A stretch of DNA of 63,469 nucleotides, the filler included, from Guillardia theta CCMP2712 (lineage: Eukaryota; Protista; Cryptophyta), in NCBI RefSeq assembly GCF_000315625.1. It is 4 parts of 4 records of this genome, joined end to end, with 100 filler letters (N's around TTAATTAATTAA, not from the genome) between each part and the next. Parts side by side here need not be neighbours in the genome. Positions count along the whole stretch, not along the records: positions 44,921 to 61,661 come from NW_005434526.1; 3 more parts are not named here. The stretch is one strand, 5' to 3'. The notes beneath the pieces were generated by a model that saw only the letters and a list, made by a program, of their open reading frames with translations, did not search any database and was not told the origin of the DNA. Position 1 is the first letter of the stretch. Each line of letters begins with the position of its first letter. The position numbers and the translations under genes were made by a program. Below are positions 4,451 through 59,304 of this stretch, one piece after another.

Positions 4451-5052
4451 TTAAGCCAGTAACTGGTCCTTGAATCTATCTGCATCTACCACCTGATGAA
4501 AACCAATAAACAGAAGTATGAAGCTTGTTGTTCGCACCTCACACATCCACATGGCAAATCGATCGGGGTTTGCTGATAGATCAGCGATCTTGGTGCAGAT
4601 CACGTGGAGTCTTTGATCCGCGTCCTTGCTCAAAATACCTACAATTCAAATGTCACATTTGAAAGGTTTGCCCCTGCGATGAGCTTCCAAGGCACCTTGC
4701 GCCATCACGTACATTCCCTTGGCCAGTCGCCATGTATCTTTGTACTTGTCCTGTAAGGTCTCATGAGCATGTTCTTCGTTGCCGGACCCAAAGACAAGTT
4801 CTTACATAAACTTTGTACAACTCGGTACAATCAATTGAAACTACACCGGAACCATCATCAACCATGGCAGTTGTTTGTGTCTCAGTTTGCCGTAGGTCGA
4901 CTACATCCCCCTAGAGTTGCCAGTTAGTCTTCACATAACCTCTTTAACAAACGTCGTACTTGTATCCATACCCTTACATCTCTTCCCAGGTCCAACGAAC
5001 GCCTATGAGTTGATTCCAGCTGATCGACATGAAGCTTCACGCAAACGTCCAT
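4451..5052 (-). CDS. RMI2: RMI2-like OB-fold protein (RecQ-mediated genome instability 2), multi-exon
   Basis: Manual splice gives MDVCVKLHVDQL...VRVWIQ|GDVVDL...AMVDDGSGVVSID...AKGMYVMAQG...VICTKIADLSANPDRFAMWMCEV, matching the RMI2 pattern VWxQG/DDGxG/GxYVMxxG/KxxDLSxNP/MWxxEV. Confidence 0.8.
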
Positions 5053-50081: not shown

Positions 50082-52966
50082 TATCGTCGTCGTCGTCGTC
50101 ATCATCATCATCATCAACAACAACAACATCGTCGTCGTCATCATCATCATCATCGTCGTCATCATCATCATCCTACCTGACATCTTCTGCGCCTTGCGGT
50201 AAGACTTGAGGAGCATAGGTGAGGGCAGCGATCGGGAAGCTACTTCGAGTCAGGCGAACCATGAGAGAAGGGGGGAGGAGGTGAGAGGAGAGAAAGGAGT
50301 AGGAGGCGAACCTCGAGGAACCTCTCGGCGGAGGTAGAGGATGGCAGCGTTCACAAGCTGCATGGGCATTGCGGCAGCCTTGACGAGGTTCTGAGCAAGG
50401 AGCTCCGAGTACAGCTGAACAAGATCAGCACAAGGGGGAGGACAGGACGACAAGAGAGCAAGGAAGCGGGAGAAGGAGGGGAGAGGAGAGGAGAGAGAAC
50501 TGAAGAGGAGGGGAGGGAGGGAGGGAGGGAGGGAGGGAGGGGAGGGAGGGAGGGAGGGAGGGAGGGAGGGAGGGAGGGGAGGGAGGGAGGGAGGGAGGGA
50601 GGGAGGGAGGGAGGGAGGGAGGGAGGGAGGGAGGGAGGGAGGGAGGGAGGGAGGGNNNNNNNNNNNNNNNNNNNNNNNNNNNNNNNNNNNNNNNNNNNNN
50701 NNNNNNNNNNNNNNNNNNNNNNNNNNNNNNNNNNNNNNNNNNNNNNNNNNNNNNNTTGCTGCCGGCCAGGAGAGCAGGGAGGGGAAGTACTGCTCGAGCA
50801 TGTAGGAGATCATCTGCACCGCTCTCAGGCCATCTACCTCCTCCCTCCTCCCTCCTCCCTCCTCCCTCCTCCCTCCTCCCTCCTCCCTCCTTCTCGTCCT
50901 GCTGCTTCCCTCTCACCTGGACTGTCTTCCACCGGCCCTGTGCCGTGATCATGGCCATGGTTGTGCTGTAGGCAAAGAGTCCGAGGTGTCGGGGATAGGA
51001 AACCATGAGGTCTGCACGTAGAGTCAGGATGAGATCGAGGGGCAAGAACCAACTGAGGAGGCGGGAGGAGGGAGGCGGGAGGGAGGAGGAGCTGTAAAGT
51101 GAGATTACCCCGGAATGCGACGAGGAAGGAGACAAACTTCGCAATCAAGAGATTTCCTGAGTCGTACAACTACTTGTGGTGAGAGAGGAGTGGAGCAGAG
51201 CAACGAGAAGGAGGGGAGGGAAGAGAAGGACAGGAGAGTGAAGAGGAGATGAGAAGAAGAGCAGAGGGACGTAGAGGCGGGGGACGAGAAAGGGAGGAAA
51301 AGGAGACTGAGAGGAGGGAGGGGATAGAGGAAACGGCTGTCGAGTGGGAGGGAGAGCAGCATCGAGGGGAGAACCTCGAGGATGATTCGCCAGACAGCAT
51401 CCTGAAGCTTGTGGAGCATCGCGTCGATCCTCTTGAGCAGTAGGGCAGGGTTGCTGCAGGAAAGTTGGCGAAGAGAGGGGGAGAGAGAGTTGAGGTACCG
51501 GACGGATGTCGAGAGGAACCGGAGGAAGCTCACGGCGAGTCGCTGCACATATTTGAGGAGCTTGTAAAGCGACTGCAGCGACGTCAGAGAAGGAGGAGAG
51601 AGGGGGAAGAGGACGAGCAGTGGGATGAGGGCGAGAAGAGGGAGGGGGATGAGGATGAGCTGAAAGTGAGAGAGGAGGCGAGGTGACGACGAGGAGACGA
51701 GAGGAGCAGTAGCCTGACCTGAGGGGTGGACATTTTCATCAGCTCCTCGGCAAACACAGAAATCTTTTTCATGAGGCCGTAGACCTGCGCGACCCGAGCT
51801 GGAGGAGGAGATGAGAGGAAAGTGAGACAAGGGGAGAGAAGGTACCCAGGACAATGAAGAAGGACGCGAAGAAAGCGACCGTAAGGGGGAGCAGAAACTG
51901 CGGTTGAAAGTTAACAGGAAAGGAGGTAGAGGAGAGGTGAAAGTGCATAAAGGAAAGCAGAAGGGTGGGCAAGGGGAGTAGGGTTGGGTATAGGCGAGGA
52001 AGGAGGGAGGAGGACGAGAGATGAGAAGAGGCGAGGACAGGAGAGGACAGGAGAAGGTCGTACCTTGTGTGGTACTCTAGAGGAAATGAGCTCGTAGAGT
52101 TCAGCAGGCAGCCCATTGAGATGCTGAAACCCCTTGCGAAGGGGCTGGGAGATTTGAGTGCTGCGCTCATAGAGCAGAGATCGCCTGCCCGCCGATCAGA
52201 GACAACAAGCCACACAGCATGTAAGACCCGTGCGAAACCAACGAAGTAACTGACTCAGACGCGCTTCTTGCTCGCTTCAACAGTCTCTGAGAGGAAAGAA
52301 GGTGAGGTGCCAAGATTGAGAGAGGGGAGGGGAGGGAGGTGAGCGGGAAAGAGATGGGAAAGAGAGGGAGGAGCGATGGGGAAGGGGGAAGGGGGGAGAG
52401 GGGAGAGGGAAGAGGGGGAAGTGAGGAGGAGGGGAGAGGGGGGAACGAGTGGAGAGCAAGGGGAGAAGAGAGGAGGAGGACAGGAGGGGAGAAGAGAGGA
52501 GGACAGGAGGGGAGAGGCAGAAAGTACCTGACTGAACGAGGTGGCCTCCTCTGCCGCCGAAGGTTCACCGGACGCTCTAACCGTCAAGGTTCAGTCCCTG
52601 AAGGTTCACGGGGAGCAAGTCAAGACCTTCGTTTTCTCGTCTGTGCTGGGCCTTCTGCCTTGGACTTGTTGCTTGCTGCTACACCTGCAACCCCTCAGAC
52701 GAACTCGCTCCCTCCCCTTTCTCAGTACCTCCTCGCAAACATAAATTTCTGGGCAAGGGGAGGACAGGGCTTGACAGCAGGTCGATGCTCCTGACAAGAG
52801 GGGTAGGGGGAAGCGAGTTGAGCCTTCGGAGACGATGAGCATGCAGACTTCCGTCCAATCCAGTGACGGAACAGCAGAACATGACGATCAGGAGGCTAGG
52901 CAGGAGAAAACGATAGACCCTTTCCATGCTCTGGGTCGTTGTAGCTTTCATCATTCGATTCATCAT
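49610..52966 (-). CDS. Hypothetical multi-exon protein with signal peptide and LCLRGG motif
   Basis: FLLPSLLIVMFCCSVTG signal; spliced RNLCLRG|GVAAS; a series of coding-like exons separated by CT-rich introns, ending MEPLKNLFS*. Confidence 0.6.
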
Positions 52967-53679
52967 CGGCAACCAGGGAGGGGCTCTGGGATTTGATCAA
53001 GAGTGCAGGTTGATGGTTGGAAGAGAGTCAGAAACTTGAGGGCCAAAGTCTGTCAAGATATCTAGTTCGACCCATTCTCAACCCCAGATTCAAAATTCCT
53101 TTCGCTCCCACCCTCCCTGCAGCAATGGTCAAGAACCAAGAAACAGCATAGATACGAGGCTTCAACTTTTGCTTGTCTACGTTATACAGAGATTGCTTCA
53201 AAGTCATGTCATGTCATCTAAAATGCACCATTTGAAAGCGGTCCTGAGAATGGAGAAGGAGCAGGCATTCAGAGATTTCAACGGTACGTCTGAGATCACT
53301 ATCTCCTTCTTCTCAGACAAGGAAACCATGAGTCTCATCCGCCTGATCTCATCGCACCAGGTCCACTGCCCCCTTACACTCTCGTCCTCGGTCCTTGGAT
53401 TTTCTCTTCCTTTACCCTTTCCCTGTTCCCCTCCCTTCCCATCCACTAGCCTCCTCTCCCTTTCAACTCCATCCCCCTCAGCACACACTGAGTGTCGTCA
53501 TTCTGAATGTCTTCATCTCTACTCTCCTCTCTCCCCTCCCCTCCTCTCCTCTCCTCTCCTCTCCTCTCCTCTCCCCTCCCATTCTCTTTCCCCTCAACAT
53601 CCGCTTTGCATGGGGCGGATCTGCCGTTACGAGTCCTTCCGTTACAACGACGGTTACCAAAACGAATTTTACGTTCAAC

Positions 53680-54145
53680 TTCTGACTCAGTGAGGGCCCG
53701 GGGCTTGACAGTGAGTGAACTCAGTCGGCCCGGTGACTCCCCGGGCCCGGGGTACGGTACGCGGTACGTCGGGCCGTGACCGGTGGCGTCCAGCGGCGGC
53801 GAGTCGGGCCGGGTTTGAAGAAGGTCTTCCACAGCCTGGAACACACTTGAAGTCGAAGATCATGATGGCATGCGAGTGGTGGAGGTCGTTGTGATCGGAA
53901 TCTTTCGTGACTCGAGTCGTGACTGAACGGTATATGCACTCTAGGCTGCCAGCCTCCGACTCGGTTGGCCCTGCTAGTCATGACCGTAGGGGCCGGGCCG
54001 GGCCGCTGCGCCGCGATCGGCCCCGGGGACGGTCGGACGGTCCGATTGACTCAGAGTCAGTGAGCGGCCGGGCGTCACAGTGGTGCTCGTGACCGGCGGC
54101 GGGCCCGGGGCGGCCTCGGATCGGATCGGACAGTCGGAGGTGGGG
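53680..54145. repeat. CpG-dense palindrome-rich dispersed element
   Basis: CCCCGGGCCCGGGG, GACTCGAGTC, TGACTCAGAGTCA and (TCGGA)n; composition differs sharply from the flanks. Confidence 0.65.
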
Positions 54146-54207
54146 GCGATTTGAGGAATTGCGGCTCCTTGCATGGAATGATGATAACAAGCGCAAAACA
54201 AACATTT

Positions 54208-57200
54208 TCAAGAACATGCAGCGGCAAAGTAAGAAGTAGCCAGCGGGAGACTGTCGACATGAACGGTCAACAGCTGACGGTGGCGGGCAGCAAGAACGAA
54301 CCTCAAGTCCGGCTGCGACCTCCAACAGCCTTCCATGCTCGAGCCATCCAAGATGAGTCGTTCCACATCCTTGACCTGACCGAGGATCTTCATCCTTCCC
54401 GCTCCCAACTCACATGGACGCACCTGATCCTTGCCATCATTCCCGCCGATAGCCAGGAGCTCGCCATTGAAGGTGAGGAGGATGCAGTTGCGGCTGCAGG
54501 GCAGGTCAGTCACTTTGCATCGCTGGATCGGAGCTACCGAGGGCTCTTGAGGTCTGGCGCAGACACCCAGGCACAAGCTGAAGCATCGTACCTCTCCTAC
54601 ACCGCCAGTCAAGCTGTTTCCTCTCCCAAGTTGTCCTCCCCATCCCCCTCCTCCTCCTCCTACATCCCCATCCCCCTCCCTCCATCCCCTTCCCCTCCTC
54701 CTGACTCACCGAAGTTCTCAACCATTCCGCCCACATGGAATCGAAGCCACCAGCAGCGAACCTGCAGGAGTATGTCAGGTGGAGGTGAGGCGAAGGAAGC
54801 AGGAAGAGCAGGAGCAATGCAAGACAAGACGGGAGGAGACGGCCGAAGGACTCACATCTGCCCGTTGACTACGGCAACTCCCAAGTTCTCCCTTCGCGTT
54901 GTCATGCCTGAGGAGAGGGGAGGTCAAGGAAGGAGTGTGCGAGGGGAGCGCGTGCGGGGTCAGGAGGGATCTTACCAGCAACGGGAACCCATCTATCCTC
55001 CCAGGGATTGTACTTCTCTACACTCCTCTGCAACGCCCAGCAGTCAGTCTCAATCGCAATCGCCCGAGATAGCCCCCTGTACCTGAGACATCTGTCCATC
55101 TGTAGACTTGGTAAGCAGGAGACACAGCGAGCAGGGAGCTAAACTCACCCGATCCTCCGACAGCATAGATAGAACCATTGAGGGCGCACGCCCCAAACGC
55201 AGATCTGAGATGGAGCATGAGAAGAGGCAGCAGGCAATCGAAACTTCTGATCAACCTCGGTGCTGAAAGACTCGCCACTTCCTCCCATTCATCTTTCGCG
55301 GCATCATACCTCTCAACCTGTTCAAACGACGGGGAATCAAGGCAGGAGTAACGGGGGCATGACGGTACCTGACGCAGCCAATCTTGTCCGTCAAATCCTC
55401 CCATCACGTAGAGGAACCCTGAATGTCCCGATGTGGTCAGACCTTGACAGCTCAACTCTGCTTGTCATACCATCCAGAACGGCAAGAGCTGGGCTGGCAC
55501 GAGGAATCCTCAGGTCGGCAACGCGCACCCATCTGTGGATCAACCACGTCAGACGCGCTGCCAGTCTTCCTCATGCTCACCGTCCGAGCGAGACGTCGAG
55601 TCGCTCAACCGAGGAGAGGACGCTTCGCCCATCCCAGCCCCCCACCACATACAGTTCGCCATTGAGGACCTGCAGGAGCGCAAGGCCGTCAGGATGAGGA
55701 GGCCAGCATGTCGCATCGTGTACCGCTGCTCGAGCCGAGACTCTCGGGCGGATCATGTCAGGCCCTGCTTCCCAATTGCCTGACATCCTGCAAAGACGCC
55801 TCAGCCACTGGGGGCCCCCCTTCCCCCCTCATCCCTCCACCTGTCGTAGATGATGGTGTTGGCTGTCGTCGCGTTGTCCATGTCCCTTCTCCCACCACAG
55901 ATGAAGAGAAACCTCCCGGGCTCCAGCAGCTGTGCAAGTCAACCAACCGGTGAGTTCCCTCTCTTCCCTCGCTGCCCTCACACCCTCCCACCTGCTCTGC
56001 TCCAGGTCGAGTTCCTCCTCGCGGCCCCGACCCGAACCGCATGTTGCGGACATAGGAGGAGAGCTGGTTCCCTGCAGCAGGGCCCTCCAGCAGGCCCTTG
56101 ACAGCCGATGCGATCAGAGGAGCTCCGCGCTTCGCCATAATGCGAGCGATGCACTCGAACACGAAGATGAGCAGCTGGCCGATGCTGAAGATGGAGCCTG
56201 CCGCTCCTGCGAACGCGCTCACCAGCAGCCGGATGACTGCGATGTCTCCCGGGCTGTTCCACGTGGGTCGAACGCCATCGACGGCAGGGACGACAGAGGT
56301 GGCAAACGGGTTGGCAGGCCGGACTTCCGAGCTCACGGGAGGGCTGGAGCCCCACAGGCGATTCAAGAAGCTGTACAAGGGGCCAAGGGGAGTCCCGTTG
56401 CTGTTGCTGTCACTGGGCATGGGGTTGATAGGAGGAGGAGGAGGCTCCCACTGAACTGTCGGGGGGTTGTTGTTGCAGTTGATGTAGAAGAACGCCTGGC
56501 GGTTCAGGTCCCATTGTTTCGCCCAACCAGGAGGTAGCGGAAGGTCTCTGGGAGCTCCTGCTGTAGCACTAGGAGCATTGATGCTCCCCAGGGCTCGTTC
56601 CAGATGCGCAATGCTCTCTTTGGCCCGCAGCAACTCTGCGTTGACTTGCGATGCTGGCAGTTGCCCCATCTGATTCTGACTCTGTTGGCCAAGGAAGCCC
56701 GTAGCGCCTTGATTCAGTCCGCTCACAGGAGGAGCTTGCGCGTTGGGTGAGAAGACAGAACTTTGAGGATTAGATGATCCCATGGTGAAAGAGTTCCTCG
56801 ATGGGTCAAAGAGCGAGCTCGGTTGTAGCGAAGGCGGCTGGCTCGGGTTGCCAAAGAGCGAAGAAGCCTGCGGTGCAGAGTTGGATGCTCCTCCGAACGT
56901 AGACCCTCCGCTTCCCATCGGTCCACCAAACAAGGAGGGCTGGGAGGGCTGGGAGTTGTTGGCCTCGTTGCCAAAAAGAGAGCTCCCTCCAAGATTTCCG
57001 AAGATGGACCCTGACGACCCCGGCAAGTTGCTGAAGAACGAGGGTTTGTCCTGTTGAGTCTGTTGTACAGGGTTGTTCAAGGAGCCAAAGAGACCTGAAG
57101 ACTGCTGAGGAGGGTTCTGCTGTCCCTGCTGACCTCCAAACAGTCCTGTGGAGCTTCCTCCGAAGAGGCTCGATCCTCCAAGTCCACTGGACTGCCCGGT

Positions 57201-57581
57201 CAGTCCACCTGAACCGAAACCGCCTGGCGCTGACGAGCCTTGCGGCATGCTTCCTCCAAACATCGAGCTCGATCCTCCGGCGTTCTGATTTGATCCTCCA
57301 AAGATGCTGAAGGGGTTAGAACTCTGCTGAGGCTGCTGCTGCTGCTGCTGCTGTGGCTGAGACGATGAGGCGGAGGTTGCGAAGGGATTGAAGGTGCCTG
57401 TTAGGGTGAGAGAAGGTCAGAGCCTACAAGGAAGCATGATTGTCAGCGAGTTACTTTGCTGTTGCTCTCCGAATTTGAATGGAGAACCTTGTTGTTGCGT
57501 TTCAGAGAAAAATCCTCGGACAGGAGACTGTAGCACGTAGAAAATCTTGTTCAGCTCTGGAGAAGCTCGCAATATACAATA

Positions 57582-57633
<52 letters not shown>

Positions 57634-58028
57634 ATTGAATCCAAATGGGTTCAAGGTCGGGGAGGTTTGTTGTAGAGGACTTGTCGGGAACAAGCTTTGG
57701 CCCTATCGGTCGTATCAGCACATGTGAACATTTCTCAAGAGATGGCAACCGGCGGGTTAGCAGTGGGTGAGTTGATGCCGAACAGATTGCTTCCTTGCGG
57801 CTGCGGCGAGCCCCAGAAGTTTGCGCTCCCACCCCGAAGACGCAAGCATGGACCACCCTCCTCGCCAAGCTTCAAGCCTGATTCATGCACTAACGCCTTG
57901 CCTCTGGTGCCGGGGGGATCGAGACGGTGCAAGAGGTGCCCTGTGTCTCTGTAGACTTCAGTAGAGATGGTGGTTGTCAAAAAGAAGAAGATGGCGAGGA
58001 TTTGCAGCTGAGGCTTCTTCAAAGGCAT
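54208..58028 (-). CDS. Signal peptide + LRLRGG + FG-repeat + WW + Kelch-repeat protein
   Basis: Spliced frame is continuous from MPLKKPQLQILAIFFFL through many SLFG/GLFG repeats, WW (LPPGWAKQWDLNRQAFFYINCN...VQWEPP) and Kelch blades (LYVVGGWDG, LYVMGGFDG, IYAVGGS, LLAIGGNDG). Confidence 0.8.
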
Positions 58029-59304
58029 TCTTTCTTGGCGCGTCTTCAACTCTTAGCAGATGTTTGACTTCAAGACGTGACTTATGACGAACCCCAAAGA
58101 CACACAGGAAACGCAGAACCTTCAAGCTCAAGTTGCATCTCGAGCAGTAAAATCACAAAATCCTGAAAGAGAACATGTTAGACTTGAAGCGAATGAGCCG
58201 CACGAATGGCAACTCGTAGCAGAGCGAGCCAGGGGGCGGAAGCAGACACAAGCGAGTGAAGGAGCACTAGGGCACAGCATGTGCTGCAGGAGACCTAATC
58301 TCGTCACATCCTCTTCAATCTTCACTTTTCAAGTAACTTGCCGCCTTGGCCCCTCCCTTCCACGAGGCAAAGGACAGGTGCAGCATATTCTCCATAACAA
58401 GTCTCCCAGCAACCCATCAGCCACCTCAACACAAACACCCTGACAAAGGGAGCGGGCATCAACCAGACCCTTCCATGCAGAGACTCTGCTTCTCATCCTG
58501 CTCCTAATCCTCCTCTGTCCTCCTCCTCCTCCATCTCTCCCGCCTCCCTTCTCTGTCCTCCCTTCCAGCCATTCCCCCCTCCTCTCCCGCCAAACTCCCC
58601 TCATCCCCTCCTTCAAGCCCTCATCCCCCCATCACCCCCACATGCCGGGGCCCGGCCCAGCCCGCTTCTGCCTCCCCGATGACTGCCCCGATGACTCAGA
58701 GTAAATCAGGTCATCCATCTTCCTGGTTTCTTCGGTCTTGCAAGGAACACCTACCCCACTCTAGATTTTCCTCAACTACTTCCATGTCAGTACCCCCCTT
58801 TTCCACTGTATTAGTACCCGTCATCATCCTCTATGAACCACCCCTACCCAGCTGACTTCATGTCGCACCCCTACAGCAACTGGAGGCGATCAACTACTTT
58901 GTACCGTTGACTACCCCTGGGACCCACCCTCACGTTCATGGAGTACCCCAATTTTACTGGTTTGAATGAGGGGTACATATTGTTTTGTTGGTCCCACCAA
59001 CCTGGCATACCCCACCCCCTCAAGGAACCTTCCCGGACCCTTGACCCCACCCACTACTCCTCACCTACCTTGCCACCTTTTGACCCCTACCCTATCCATT
59101 TCGCTGTCTGAGTCTACTTTACCCTGCACCCCTGGTAGAATTCGAATCACCCCACCCTACTTCGCTGCCCATTCACCGGATCGTATGGTCATTCCATGAC
59201 CCACCCACCCACCCACCCACCCACCAGGTGTTCCAGGTCTACTCCACCCCACCCCCTTGCCCTCCCATTTCCCCATACCTCCGCTAGTATGCAGCAGGCA
59301 GGGA

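What the first reader, a model, noticed from the sequence alone, without database searches (positions are those of the whole stretch)
54208..58028. Signal-peptide-bearing FG-repeat/WW/Kelch protein: candidate nucleomorph or periplastid nucleoporin-like factor
Seen: by manual splicing one gene encodes a signal peptide, a leader ending PCLRLRGG, a long N/Q/S/G-rich region with many SLFG/GLFG/NPFG repeats, a short coiled coil, a WW domain, a hydrophobic helix (IAVIRLLVSAFAGAAGSIFSIGQLLIFVF) and a Kelch propeller. Established: GLFG/SLFG repeats typify Nup98-class nucleoporins, which lack signal peptides; in cryptophytes bipartite leaders route proteins to the periplastid compartment holding the nucleomorph, whose pore complement is highly reduced. 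I know no nucleoporin with this architecture. Inference: a host-encoded novel component of the nucleomorph pore or a phase-separating periplastid scaffold.
Basis: partly seen in the sequence, partly recalled or inferred. Interest (0 to 1): 0.82.

Follow-up and report, generated by a model that had tools for sequence, protein, structure and literature searches.

The report
Signal-peptide FG-repeat WW–Kelch membrane protein
A cryptophyte alga (Guillardia theta) expresses a mis-annotated gene for a membrane-anchored protein that joins a secretory-type leader to a nuclear-pore-like "FG" gel-forming domain, a WW domain and a Kelch propeller. That makes it a testable, still unproven, candidate for the missing pore or scaffold material of the alga's relict second nucleus.

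Summary
The window is Guillardia theta CCMP2712. On the minus strand, CDS 58028..54208, 19 coding exons encode a 922-aa protein:
- hydrophobic signal-peptide-like leader (residues 1-22)
- fast-evolving spacer ending in CLRLRGG
- 338-aa almost uncharged FG domain with SLFG, GLFG and related FG motifs
- short helix
- WW domain
- roughly 39-residue hydrophobic helix
- six-bladed KLHL-type Kelch propeller

RNA-like contigs from three studies put FG, WW, hydrophobic helix and Kelch on one spliced transcript, and put the leader together with the first FG motifs on another of equal depth. Two CAG repeats break the assemblies between them. A colinear Hanusia phi transcript protein bridges that gap.

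The public model GUITHDRAFT_166251 starts at an internal Met, so it lacks the leader, and it is fused to the downstream gene. Earlier targeting screens therefore could not have seen the leader.

The domain order recurs in several unnamed metagenomic lineages, one of which looks like a cryptophyte. It was not seen in any named non-cryptophyte organism.

The protein is not a Nup98-family member: it has no autoproteolytic domain, and the Pfam FG model scores below threshold. Periplastid targeting is plausible but unproven, because the spacer lacks the positive charge of a transit peptide. The nucleomorph-pore idea remains a minority hypothesis that can be tested.

The parts
54146..58164 (-). Transcribed region. 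The 5' UTR is about 136 nt with one 18-codon out-of-frame uORF at 58138. The 3' UTR is about 62 nt.
   Evidence: Extent of the RNA-like contigs in X1, X3 and X4; uORF.
54208..58028 (-). CDS of the corrected 922-aa model: 19 coding exons, stop codon at 54208-54210.
   Evidence: The ATG at 58028 follows an in-frame stop and has A at -3.
57963..58028 (-). Signal-peptide-like leader, residues 1-22: n-region MPLKKP, h-region LQILAIFFFL, c-region TTTIS with small residues at -3 and -1.
   Evidence: Kyte-Doolittle mean 2.71 over the 10-residue h-region. 73% identical in Hanusia. No SignalP was available.
57849..57962 (-). Fast-evolving spacer, residues 23-60. It is the candidate transit-peptide-like region.
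   Evidence: 38% identity to Hanusia, against 92-98% in the folded parts. 5 K/R against 6 D/E.
57828..57848 (-). CLRLRGG junction motif, identical to the ubiquitin tail. It lies immediately before the FG domain.
   Evidence: Conserved as LRLRGG in Hanusia, IRLRGG in L007 and LALRGG in L004. No ubiquitin fold was detected.
56655..57827 (-). FG domain, residues 68-405, interrupted by three introns (57702-57748, 57528-57582, 57398-57454). Motifs are SLFG, GLFG, S[IM]FG, NPFG and others, plus two poly-Q tracts.
   Evidence: FG enrichment and low charge. Pfam Nucleoporin_FG 25.8 bits, below the 32.2 cut-off.
57583..57636 (-). CAG-repeat poly-Q tract at the end of exon 2 (residues about 116-133; the upper bound is approximate). 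A second CAG tract lies at 57322-57365. Both break short-read transcript assemblies.
   Evidence: sequence; repeats skipped, contig ends at 57607 and 57321.
56574..56654 (-). Conserved short helix, residues 406-432 (QVNAELLRAKESIAHLERALGSI).
   Evidence: 96% identical in Hanusia. A helix of similar character sits before the WW domain in L004, L007, L008 and L031. AlphaFold2 predicts a helix at low confidence.
56436..56546 (-). WW domain, residues 442-478 (LPPGWAKQWDLNRQAFFYINCNNNPPTVQWEPP), followed by a Pro-rich stretch.
   Evidence: Pfam PF00397 at 26.7 bits, E 5.7e-6. Both Trp and the final Pro are conserved in all orthologs.
56130..56246 (-). Hydrophobic helix, residues 542-580 (DIAVIRLLVSAFAGAAGSIFSIGQLLIFVFECIARIMAK). 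It is the presumed membrane anchor.
   Evidence: 19-residue hydropathy windows of 1.4-1.96. 95% identical in Hanusia and retained in P0003, L008 and L031. AlphaFold2 gives one long helix at pLDDT about 50.
54211..55929 (-). Six-bladed Kelch propeller, residues 627-922, spread over 15 small exons.
   Evidence: Pfam Kelch_1 E 5e-58. AlphaFold2 pLDDT above 90. Foldseek matches KLHL17, KLHL12, KLHL20 and Keap1 Kelch domains at TM 0.93.
55083..55099 (-). Micro-exon of 17 nt (laid by the tool as 14 letters at 55086-55099). It encodes part of GSDGQMSQ.
   Evidence: table 5c. Placing it correctly restores identity with Hanusia DGQMSQ.

Best explanation
This is one expressed nuclear gene of Guillardia theta. 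It encodes a membrane-tethered scaffold that forms a cohesive FG phase.

Shown:
- The architecture is leader, LRLRGG motif, uncharged FG domain (SLFG, GLFG and related motifs), short helix, WW domain, hydrophobic helix and KLHL-type Kelch propeller.
- The gene is transcribed and spliced.
- The domain order is conserved in Hanusia and in several uncultured lineages, at least one of which looks like a cryptophyte.

Inferred mechanism:
- The N-terminal signal peptide takes the protein into the ER.
- The fast-evolving spacer, which follows a non-aromatic residue at +1, then acts as a periplastid-type transit-like sequence. The protein therefore ends up in the periplastid compartment, the relict cytosol around the nucleomorph.
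- The leader is removed at or near the conserved LRGG|S junction.
- The hydrophobic helix anchors the protein in a membrane facing that compartment.
- The Nup98-like FG domain self-associates into a selective gel or condensate.
- The WW domain (proline-rich ligands) and the Kelch propeller (short peptide degrons or motifs) recruit partners.

Whether that membrane is the nucleomorph envelope, which would make this a pore component, is a further and less likely step.
For: - Gene and transcript: 14 spliced joints and two contigs of equal depth in three runs from three studies. The leader and the first FG motif are on the same exon. Hanusia transcript protein P0001 carries leader, FG domain, WW domain and hydrophobic helix in one ORF.
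- FG domain: 14 FG against 4.5 +/- 1.9 expected, and 2.7% charged residues. The distant ortholog L004 has 18 FG with 0.6% charged residues, mostly GLFG, although its sequence has drifted. This is the pattern of cohesive FG domains.
- WW and KLHL-type Kelch are cytosolic-type modules and they sit on both sides of the hydrophobic helix. Moog et al. used 'a cytosolic-type protein that carries a signal peptide' as a criterion for periplastid candidates, whatever the transit-peptide length, and they state the rule that the +1 residue is not aromatic or Leu (PMC3101018). Here the +1 residue is Thr under the predicted cleavage TIS|TE.
- The spacer is 38% identical between Guillardia and Hanusia, while the flanking parts are 73-98% identical. 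Targeting peptides typically evolve this way.
- Distribution: the full architecture was found only in Guillardia, Hanusia and unnamed metagenome contigs. For a neighbouring gene on contig L004/L005, the best named hits are the cryptophytes Chroomonas and Hemiselmis.
- Precedent: nucleomorph-type Nup98 of chlorarachniophytes is predicted to carry signal peptides, and cryptophytes lack any known nucleomorph FG protein (PMC6411479).
Against: - There is no localisation evidence of any kind.
- The spacer has net charge -1 (Guillardia) or 0 (Hanusia), with 6 acidic residues in 37. Functional transit peptides of red-lineage complex plastids are normally net positive (my own knowledge).
- In L004 only about 20 residues separate the hydrophobic stretch from LRGG.
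- The C-terminal flank of the hydrophobic helix is the more positive one (+2 against 0; read from the sequence). That fits a plain type-I topology, with the Kelch propeller in the host cytosol and the FG and WW parts in the lumen.
- In L004 and L007 a Met lies 7-8 residues before the GG. The leader may therefore not be universal in the family.
- No ortholog appeared under a named Chroomonas, Hemiselmis, Rhodomonas or Cryptomonas entry.
- The signal peptide was judged by eye and by hydropathy only.
Confidence: 0.38

Rival explanations
1. It is an ordinary type-I protein of the secretory pathway or cell surface. The signal peptide is cleaved in the ER. The low-complexity FG/Q/S/G-rich region, together with the WW-like module, lies in the lumen or outside the cell as a sticky, gel-like ectodomain. 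This could be part of a cryptophyte-specific surface or extrusive structure such as the periplast. The hydrophobic helix spans the membrane, and the Kelch propeller faces the host cytosol as an adaptor to cytoskeletal or ubiquitin-ligase partners.
For: - The leader looks like a signal peptide, and there is a single strongly hydrophobic helix.
- The more positive flank lies on the Kelch side, which matches the positive-inside rule for type-I insertion (read from the sequence).
- The spacer is acidic or neutral, unlike a transit peptide, and it is short in L004.
- The family appears lineage-restricted, as expected for a lineage-specific surface structure.
Against: - WW domains and uncharged GLFG-type domains are not known from luminal or extracellular proteins (my own knowledge).
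- The N-terminal part has no conserved cysteine pairs. Cys464 inside the WW domain is not conserved (Ser in P0003), and Cys61 is absent from the L004 and L007 junction motifs.
- It does not explain why the FG motifs are kept while the spacers drift.
- It does not explain the conserved LRGG junction.
Confidence: 0.32
2. The N-terminal hydrophobic stretch does not work as a targeting signal, or translation or processing begins near the LRGG junction. The protein is then a host-cytosolic, membrane-anchored FG scaffold. It might sit on the ER or nuclear envelope like a pore-membrane FG protein, or at some other organelle as a PEX13-like aromatic-Gly conduit.
For: - L004 and L007 have a Met 7-8 residues before the GG, so a leaderless form is conceivable there.
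- All modules are of cytosolic type.
- The long hydrophobic segment of about 39 residues could be a hairpin that leaves both halves on one side (low confidence).
- PEX13 shows that membrane-anchored aromatic-Gly phases occur outside nuclear pores (PMC9795577).
Against: - In Guillardia the first in-frame Met after 58028 is residue 203. The 5' contig containing the leader has the same depth as the 3' contig.
- The ATG at 58028 has a good context and an in-frame stop upstream.
- Hanusia keeps the leader at 73% identity.
Confidence: 0.15
3. The protein is a structural or barrier component of the nucleomorph pore: a membrane-anchored FG nucleoporin analogue that replaces the lost Nup98-type barrier.
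For: - Everything listed for the periplastid reading applies here too.
- Cryptophytes have pore-like structures in the nucleomorph envelope but no identified FG nucleoporin. Novel nucleoporins were explicitly proposed (PMC6411479; PMC6559170).
- The FG domain is of the cohesive, barrier-forming type, and it is tied to a membrane anchor and a beta-propeller.
Against: - It depends on periplastid targeting, which is itself unproven.
- There is no homology to any nucleoporin beyond composition.
- No ortholog was seen under named entries of other nucleomorph-bearing cryptophytes.
- FG-rich low-complexity regions also occur in proteins that have nothing to do with pores.
Confidence: 0.12

Closest known systems
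Nup98 / Nup100 / Nup116 / Nup145N (GLFG nucleoporins), including the signal-peptide-bearing nucleomorph-type Nup98 of chlorarachniophytes (PMC6411479)
   Same: Both have a long, almost uncharged, N/Q/S/G-rich domain studded with GLFG, SLFG and related FG motifs. The Pfam Nucleoporin_FG model gives a sub-threshold hit. In chlorarachniophytes, such a domain also follows a predicted signal peptide.
   Different: This protein has no C-terminal autoproteolytic (Nucleoporin2) domain and no recognisable GLEBS motif. It does have WW, hydrophobic-helix and Kelch modules that no Nup98 has. Outside composition there is no sequence homology.
Pom121 (vertebrate pore-membrane FG nucleoporin) and gp210
   Same: Pom121 combines a membrane anchor with FG repeats. 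gp210 shows that pore-membrane proteins can carry a cleavable signal peptide (my own knowledge).
   Different: In Pom121 the transmembrane helix is N-terminal and the FG repeats are C-terminal, with no WW or Kelch domain. In gp210 the luminal part is Ig-like, not FG. There is no homology to either.
PEX13 (peroxisomal YG-phase conduit; PMC9795577)
   Same: Both have an N-terminal aromatic-Gly low-complexity domain, a membrane anchor, and a small domain that binds proline-rich ligands (SH3 there, WW here). PEX13 is a worked example of a pore-like phase outside the nuclear pore.
   Different: The repeats are FG rather than YG. This protein has a Kelch propeller, a signal-peptide-like leader, different membrane segments and no sequence relationship to PEX13.
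BTB-BACK-Kelch (KLHL) substrate adaptors: KLHL20, KLHL12, KLHL17, Keap1
   Same: The Kelch propeller is of this type: 30-37% identity, TM-score 0.93, six blades.
   Different: No BTB or BACK domain is present, so there is no evident link to Cullin-3. The propeller is attached to a membrane helix instead.
GUITHDRAFT_166251 (public G. theta gene model; 'WW domain-containing protein')
   Same: It is the same locus. Residues 203-908 of the corrected model are identical to residues 1-706 of that entry.
   Different: The public model starts at an internal Met, so it lacks the leader, the LRLRGG motif and the first 135 residues of the FG domain. Its last 260 or so residues come from the downstream gene.

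Membership tests
Nup98-type GLFG nucleoporin | FG repeats of the GLFG, SLFG or related kind, set in uncharged N/Q/S/T/G-rich spacers | tested here: met
   14 FG in 338 residues, against 4.5 +/- 1.9 in shuffles; 2.7% charged residues.
Nup98-type GLFG nucleoporin | C-terminal autoproteolytic domain (Pfam Nucleoporin2, PF04096) | tested here: not met
   No such hit in Pfam scans of the exons, of P0004, or of P0001/P0002. The C-terminus is a Kelch propeller.
Nup98-type GLFG nucleoporin | Pfam Nucleoporin_FG (PF13634) at or above the gathering score | tested here: not met
   Best score 25.8 bits against a cut-off of 32.2; 17-22 bits for P0004, P0001 and P0002.
Nup98-type GLFG nucleoporin | GLEBS (Rae1/Gle2-binding) motif inside the FG region | not testable with these tools
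   No profile was available. The conserved helix at 406-432 lies in a comparable position, but its similarity to GLEBS was not established.
Periplastid-compartment protein with bipartite targeting sequence (cryptophyte/diatom rule, PMC3101018) | N-terminal signal peptide | tested here: inconclusive
   It has a positively charged n-region (KK), a 10-residue h-region with Kyte-Doolittle mean 2.71, and T and S at -3 and -1. No SignalP-type predictor was available.
Periplastid-compartment protein with bipartite targeting sequence (cryptophyte/diatom rule, PMC3101018) | First residue after signal-peptide cleavage is not aromatic and not Leu | tested here: met
   The predicted cleavage TIS|TEV gives Thr at +1. 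This holds only if that cleavage site is correct (rule).
Periplastid-compartment protein with bipartite targeting sequence (cryptophyte/diatom rule, PMC3101018) | Transit-peptide-like extension between the signal peptide and the conserved mature part, normally net positive and poor in acidic residues | tested here: inconclusive
   An extension of 37-38 residues exists and evolves fast (38% identity). Its net charge is -1 in Guillardia and 0 in Hanusia. It is short in L004.
Periplastid-compartment protein with bipartite targeting sequence (cryptophyte/diatom rule, PMC3101018) | Experimental localisation to the periplastid compartment | not testable with these tools
   Needs GFP fusions or immuno-EM.
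WW domain (PF00397) | Profile match plus the two signature Trp residues and the final Pro | tested here: met
   26.7 bits, E 5.7e-6, which is 0.2 bits under the gathering score. The pattern GW...W..P is invariant in Hanusia, P0003, P0122-P0124, P0144 and L031.
BTB-Kelch (KLHL) adaptor | Six-bladed Kelch propeller | tested here: met
   Kelch_1 E 5e-58; AlphaFold2 pLDDT above 90; Foldseek TM 0.93 to KLHL17, KLHL12 and KLHL20.
BTB-Kelch (KLHL) adaptor | N-terminal BTB and BACK domains | tested here: not met
   No PF00651 or PF07707 hit in P0004, P0002 or P0001.
Ubiquitin-like domain or ubiquitin fusion | C-terminal LRLRGG tail | tested here: met
   Residues 62-67 are LRLRGG. Orthologs have LRLRGG, IRLRGG or LALRGG.
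Ubiquitin-like domain or ubiquitin fusion | Beta-grasp ubiquitin fold upstream of the tail | tested here: not met
   Pfam at E up to 10 gave no ubiquitin-family hit for any of the three leaders. PDB phmmer at E up to 10 gave no ubiquitin chain. Only 60 residues precede the tail, and 22 of them are hydrophobic leader.

The most novel reading that the evidence does not exclude
The protein is imported into the periplastid compartment and its leader is clipped after the ubiquitin/NEDD8-like LRGG tail, possibly by the deubiquitinase of the SELMA import machinery. It then anchors a cohesive FG (SLFG/GLFG-type) phase in the nucleomorph envelope, or in another periplastid membrane. It would thus be a non-homologous replacement for the lost FG nucleoporins: a minimal, membrane-tethered 'pore gel' with its own beta-propeller and WW docking sites.
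Probability: 0.1. Interest if true: 0.9.

Novelty: new variant of a known kind. Interest (0 to 1): 0.62.

Why it matters
Nucleomorphs are the only nuclei thought to work without a canonical pore complex. For cryptophytes, not one FG-barrier protein is known (PMC6411479, PMC6559170).

This gene provides a concrete and cheaply testable candidate. It is an expressed, lineage-restricted protein that joins an ER-entry leader to a Nup98-like cohesive FG domain and a membrane anchor. Earlier screens could not have flagged it, because the public gene model lacks the N-terminus.

The finding has value even if the protein goes elsewhere. It would then be an unusual case of an FG phase on the non-cytosolic side of a membrane, or of a PEX13-like conduit at another organelle.

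The conserved ubiquitin-tail motif at the leader junction also suggests a processing step that has not been described for this kind of targeting sequence.

The corrected gene model is a useful annotation fix in its own right.

Tried and rejected
- The raw-read RNA run X19 gave no reads on the stretch in the roughly 6% of the run that was sampled, so it is no test.
- Ubiquitin-fold hypothesis for the leader. By eye, QILAIFFFLTTTISTEV resembles ubiquitin's first hairpin. Pfam (E up to 10) and PDB phmmer (E up to 10) found nothing, so only the tail motif stands.
- I enumerated all GT..AG combinations across the uncovered 57300-57701 region. 167 two-intron solutions keep the frame open. The contig extents exclude most of them, and the Hanusia transcript picks 57528-57582 plus 57398-57454.
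- My first placement of the micro-exon (55088-55101) was wrong. I corrected it to 55083-55099.
- ESM Atlas look-ups gave no usable relative for the WW-helix part, and only generic oxidoreductase clusters for a neighbouring gene of L004.
- A JGI metagenome scan with a family profile returned mostly generic Kelch proteins. Only L031 was a true family member, and it lacks the 5' end, so no further N-termini were obtained. A WW/LRGG regular-expression scan of those loci found nothing, because introns split the motifs.
- A paper search for GUITHDRAFT_166251 found nothing.
- I considered filing the protein as a KLHL adaptor or as Nup98. Both were rejected because defining domains are missing.
- I sent no complex-prediction job, because I make no specific binding claim.


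Full report
**What is there**

The finding lies on the minus strand. The window piece is Guillardia theta CCMP2712. A word search with the large exon returned GUITHDRAFT_166251 (P0004) from a 144-kb contig. Residues 1-706 of that entry match residues 203-908 of my model. The same searches returned two Hanusia phi transcript proteins at about 87% identity.

**Transcript evidence**

- RNA-like Logan contigs of three runs from three studies (X1, X3, X4) were laid on 53300-58900. They show 14 joints, all with GT..AG ends on the minus strand.
- One contig runs from 54146 to 57321. It therefore carries most of the FG domain, the WW domain, the hydrophobic helix and the whole Kelch region.
- A second contig covers 57607-58164 with the 47-nt intron removed. 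It carries the 5' UTR, the leader, the LRLRGG motif, the first FG motifs and the start of the poly-Q tract.
- The depths of the two contigs agree within each run: 42 against 30, 8.7 against 11, and 366 against 370.
- The assemblies break at two CAG repeats. The stretch 57366-57606 is not covered by any listed contig.
- For that stretch I enumerated the intron combinations that keep the frame open. Introns 57528-57582 (55 nt) and 57398-57454 (57 nt) have canonical ends and are typical in size for this gene. They reproduce, residue for residue, the order seen in the Hanusia transcript protein P0001...NPFGFNQQQ / (S/T)PVRGFFSE.QQQGSPFKFGEQQ / S.FNPFA....
- A 113-nt intron (54597-54709) was hidden by repeat masking. 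It follows from the contig length and is the only CT..AC interval of that size.
- The reported 118-nt skip with 14 inserted letters is a 17-nt micro-exon at 55083-55099. Placing it correctly restores identity with Hanusia.

The result is 19 coding exons and 922 residues, with the stop codon at 54208-54210.

**Start codon**

The ATG at 58028 follows an in-frame stop and has A at -3. One short out-of-frame uORF (18 codons, at 58138) ends before it. The next in-frame Met is residue 203.

**The public model is wrong at both ends**

P0004 begins at that internal Met. It therefore lacks the leader, the LRLRGG motif and 135 residues of the FG domain. It also reads past the true last exons into a downstream gene, whose exons lie around 50250-52200 on the minus strand. 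The contigs end at 54146. This matters because any earlier screen for leader-bearing proteins could not have seen this one.

**Anatomy**

| Residues | Feature | Evidence |
|---|---|---|
| 1-22 | Leader MPLKKPQLQILAIFFFLTTTIS: basic n-region, strongly hydrophobic core, small residues at -3 and -1 | |
| 23-60 | Spacer | |
| 61-67 | CLRLRGG | |
| 68-405 | FG domain: 29 Phe, 14 FG against 4.5 +/- 1.9 in 5000 shuffles (none reach 14); S 19%, Q 19%, G 15%, P 11%, N 7%; 2.7% charged against 19.3% elsewhere | |
| 406-432 | Short conserved helix | |
| 442-478 | WW domain, 26.7 bits, E 5.7e-6 | |
| 542-580 | Hydrophobic stretch; AlphaFold2 draws one long helix at low confidence | |
| 627-922 | Six-bladed Kelch propeller, pLDDT above 90; Foldseek TM 0.93 to KLHL17, KLHL12, KLHL20 and Keap1 | |

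There is no BTB or BACK domain, no Nup98 autoproteolytic domain and no ubiquitin domain.

**Conservation**

Identity between Guillardia and Hanusia, by region:

| Region | Identity |
|---|---|
| Leader | 73% |
| Spacer | 38% |
| Junction (CLRLRGG...WGSPQPQG) | 90% |
| FG domain | 76% |
| Helix, WW, hydrophobic helix, Kelch | 92-98% |

More distant relatives exist only as unnamed metagenome sequences.

- P0003/P0160, on contigs L001-L006 (Tara and other marine samples), is 54-59% identical in the core.
- On L004 the upstream exon encodes 349 residues of mostly GLFG repeats: 18 FG, 0.6% charged, with a poly-Q tract. A helix follows, and then WW, hydrophobic helix and Kelch.
- L008, L007 and L031 show the same order.
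- The FG motifs are therefore kept while the spacers drift. Functional FG domains typically evolve this way.

An exhaustive HMMER search with the helix-WW-hydrophobic-helix part against 1.84 billion cluster representatives found Hanusia, fragments of these unnamed lineages, and otherwise only generic WW proteins.

For a flagellar neighbour gene of the L004 organism (read from the matching contig L005), the best named matches are the cryptophytes Chroomonas sp. CCMP1168 (55%) and Hemiselmis tepida. Palpitomonas follows at 35%. That organism is probably a cryptophyte or a close relative. I could not establish whether Goniomonas has or lacks the gene.

**The N-terminus in relatives**

- L004 begins MLTRRRNVNGRGG... 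It then has an Ala/Leu-rich hydrophobic stretch (SLLGALLLASGAALG) and about 20 further residues ending in MRLALRGG|SSPFGG.
- L007 reads ...MNLIRLRGG|SSYWGSPQHQ close to the contig edge.
- The LRGG|S junction is thus conserved in four lineages, while everything before it varies.
- LRLRGG is the tail of ubiquitin and LALRGG is the tail of NEDD8 (my own knowledge). No ubiquitin fold is detectable.
- I read the junction as a processing site. Which protease acts there is unknown.
- The Met close to the junction in L004 and L007 leaves open that those lineages can make a leaderless form.

**Interpretation**

- No nucleomorph-directed FG nucleoporin is known in cryptophytes. Only a red-algal-type Rae1 is retained.
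- Novel nucleoporins have been proposed as one solution (PMC6411479; PMC6559170).
- In chlorarachniophytes the nucleomorph-type Nup98 is predicted to carry a signal peptide, so the combination has a precedent.

For periplastid targeting:
- The modules are of cytosolic type and sit behind an ER-entry leader. This is a criterion that Moog et al. used for periplastid candidates (PMC3101018).
- Thr is at the predicted +1 position.
- The spacer evolves fast.
- The distribution is restricted.

Against periplastid targeting:
- The spacer is neutral or acidic.
- The spacer is short in L004.
- Charges flanking the helix fit a simple type-I topology.
- No orthologs are seen under named entries of other nucleomorph-bearing genera.
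- There is no experimental localisation.

**Odds**

| Reading | Probability |
|---|---|
| Periplastid membrane-tethered FG scaffold | about 0.38 (of which nucleomorph pore about 0.1) |
| Ordinary type-I endomembrane or surface protein | about 0.32 |
| Host-cytosolic membrane FG scaffold | about 0.15 |

**Comparison with known families**

In how it probably works, the protein resembles cohesive GLFG domains of the Nup98 class and, in overall logic, PEX13. PEX13 has an aromatic-Gly phase, a membrane anchor and a domain that binds proline-rich ligands (PMC9795577). In membership it is none of these. It lacks the Nup98 autoproteolytic domain, falls below the Pfam FG threshold, and lacks the BTB and BACK domains of KLHL proteins. 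The architecture is not described anywhere that I could search.

**Verdict**

The next experiment (leader-GFP, or immuno-EM) is straightforward and would be decisive.

Noticed in passing
window 57828-57848 (-); L004 about 4676-4699; L007 73-99: A ubiquitin/NEDD8-tail-like motif sits exactly at the junction between the leader and the FG domain: LRLRGG in Guillardia and Hanusia, IRLRGG in L007, LALRGG in L004. It is conserved in four lineages although the sequence upstream is not. This suggests a processing site. No ubiquitin fold is detectable.
   Followed up: partly
window 50250-54210 (-) and 57263-58028 (-): The public model GUITHDRAFT_166251 (P0004, 966 aa) is wrong at both ends. It starts at the internal Met at 57263, and it joins the Kelch gene to exons of a separate downstream gene (...SLYKLLKYVQRLAVSFLRF..., ...LYSELLAQNLVKAAAMPMQLVNAAILYLRRE...). 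The RNA-like contigs end at 54146.
   Followed up: partly
window 55083-55099 (-): A 17-nt micro-exon lies inside the Kelch region, flanked by introns of 49 and 55 nt. The gene's introns are very short throughout (44-118 nt).
   Followed up: yes
window 58082-58138 (-): A short upstream ORF of 18 codons, out of frame, lies in the 136-nt 5' UTR and ends before the main ATG.
   Followed up: no
window 57583-57636 and 57322-57365 (-): Perfect CAG repeats encode poly-Q: about 18 Q in Guillardia against 11 in Hanusia at the first tract. They fragment every short-read transcript assembly of this gene, which may be why full-length orthologs are missing from public transcriptomes.
   Followed up: partly
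window 54631-54704, 53513-53589 and neighbouring introns or intergenic DNA: Strongly CT-rich (polypyrimidine, 'CCTCC') low-complexity tracts lie in introns and between genes. They were flagged as repeats by read laying, and they produce long spurious Pro/Ser/Leu ORFs on both strands.
   Followed up: no
L003-L006 (Tara and other ENA marine metagenome contigs): The ortholog sits in a gene-dense contig with few introns, next to an EFHC1/Rib72-like flagellar gene, an AIF-like oxidoreductase, a TAFII55 gene and an NAC gene. The organism is not represented by any named sequence at 90% identity or more. The nearest named relatives of the flagellar gene are Chroomonas and Hemiselmis.
   Followed up: partly
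P0130, P0132, P0142: Small proteins from unnamed sources share the same WW subtype (PLP.GW..Q.D...[WY]F[YF]V......NPP.T.WE.P). In at least two of them it is followed by low-complexity sequence and a Gly/Ala-rich hydrophobic segment. A WW-plus-hydrophobic-segment module may therefore be older than the cryptophyte family.
   Followed up: no
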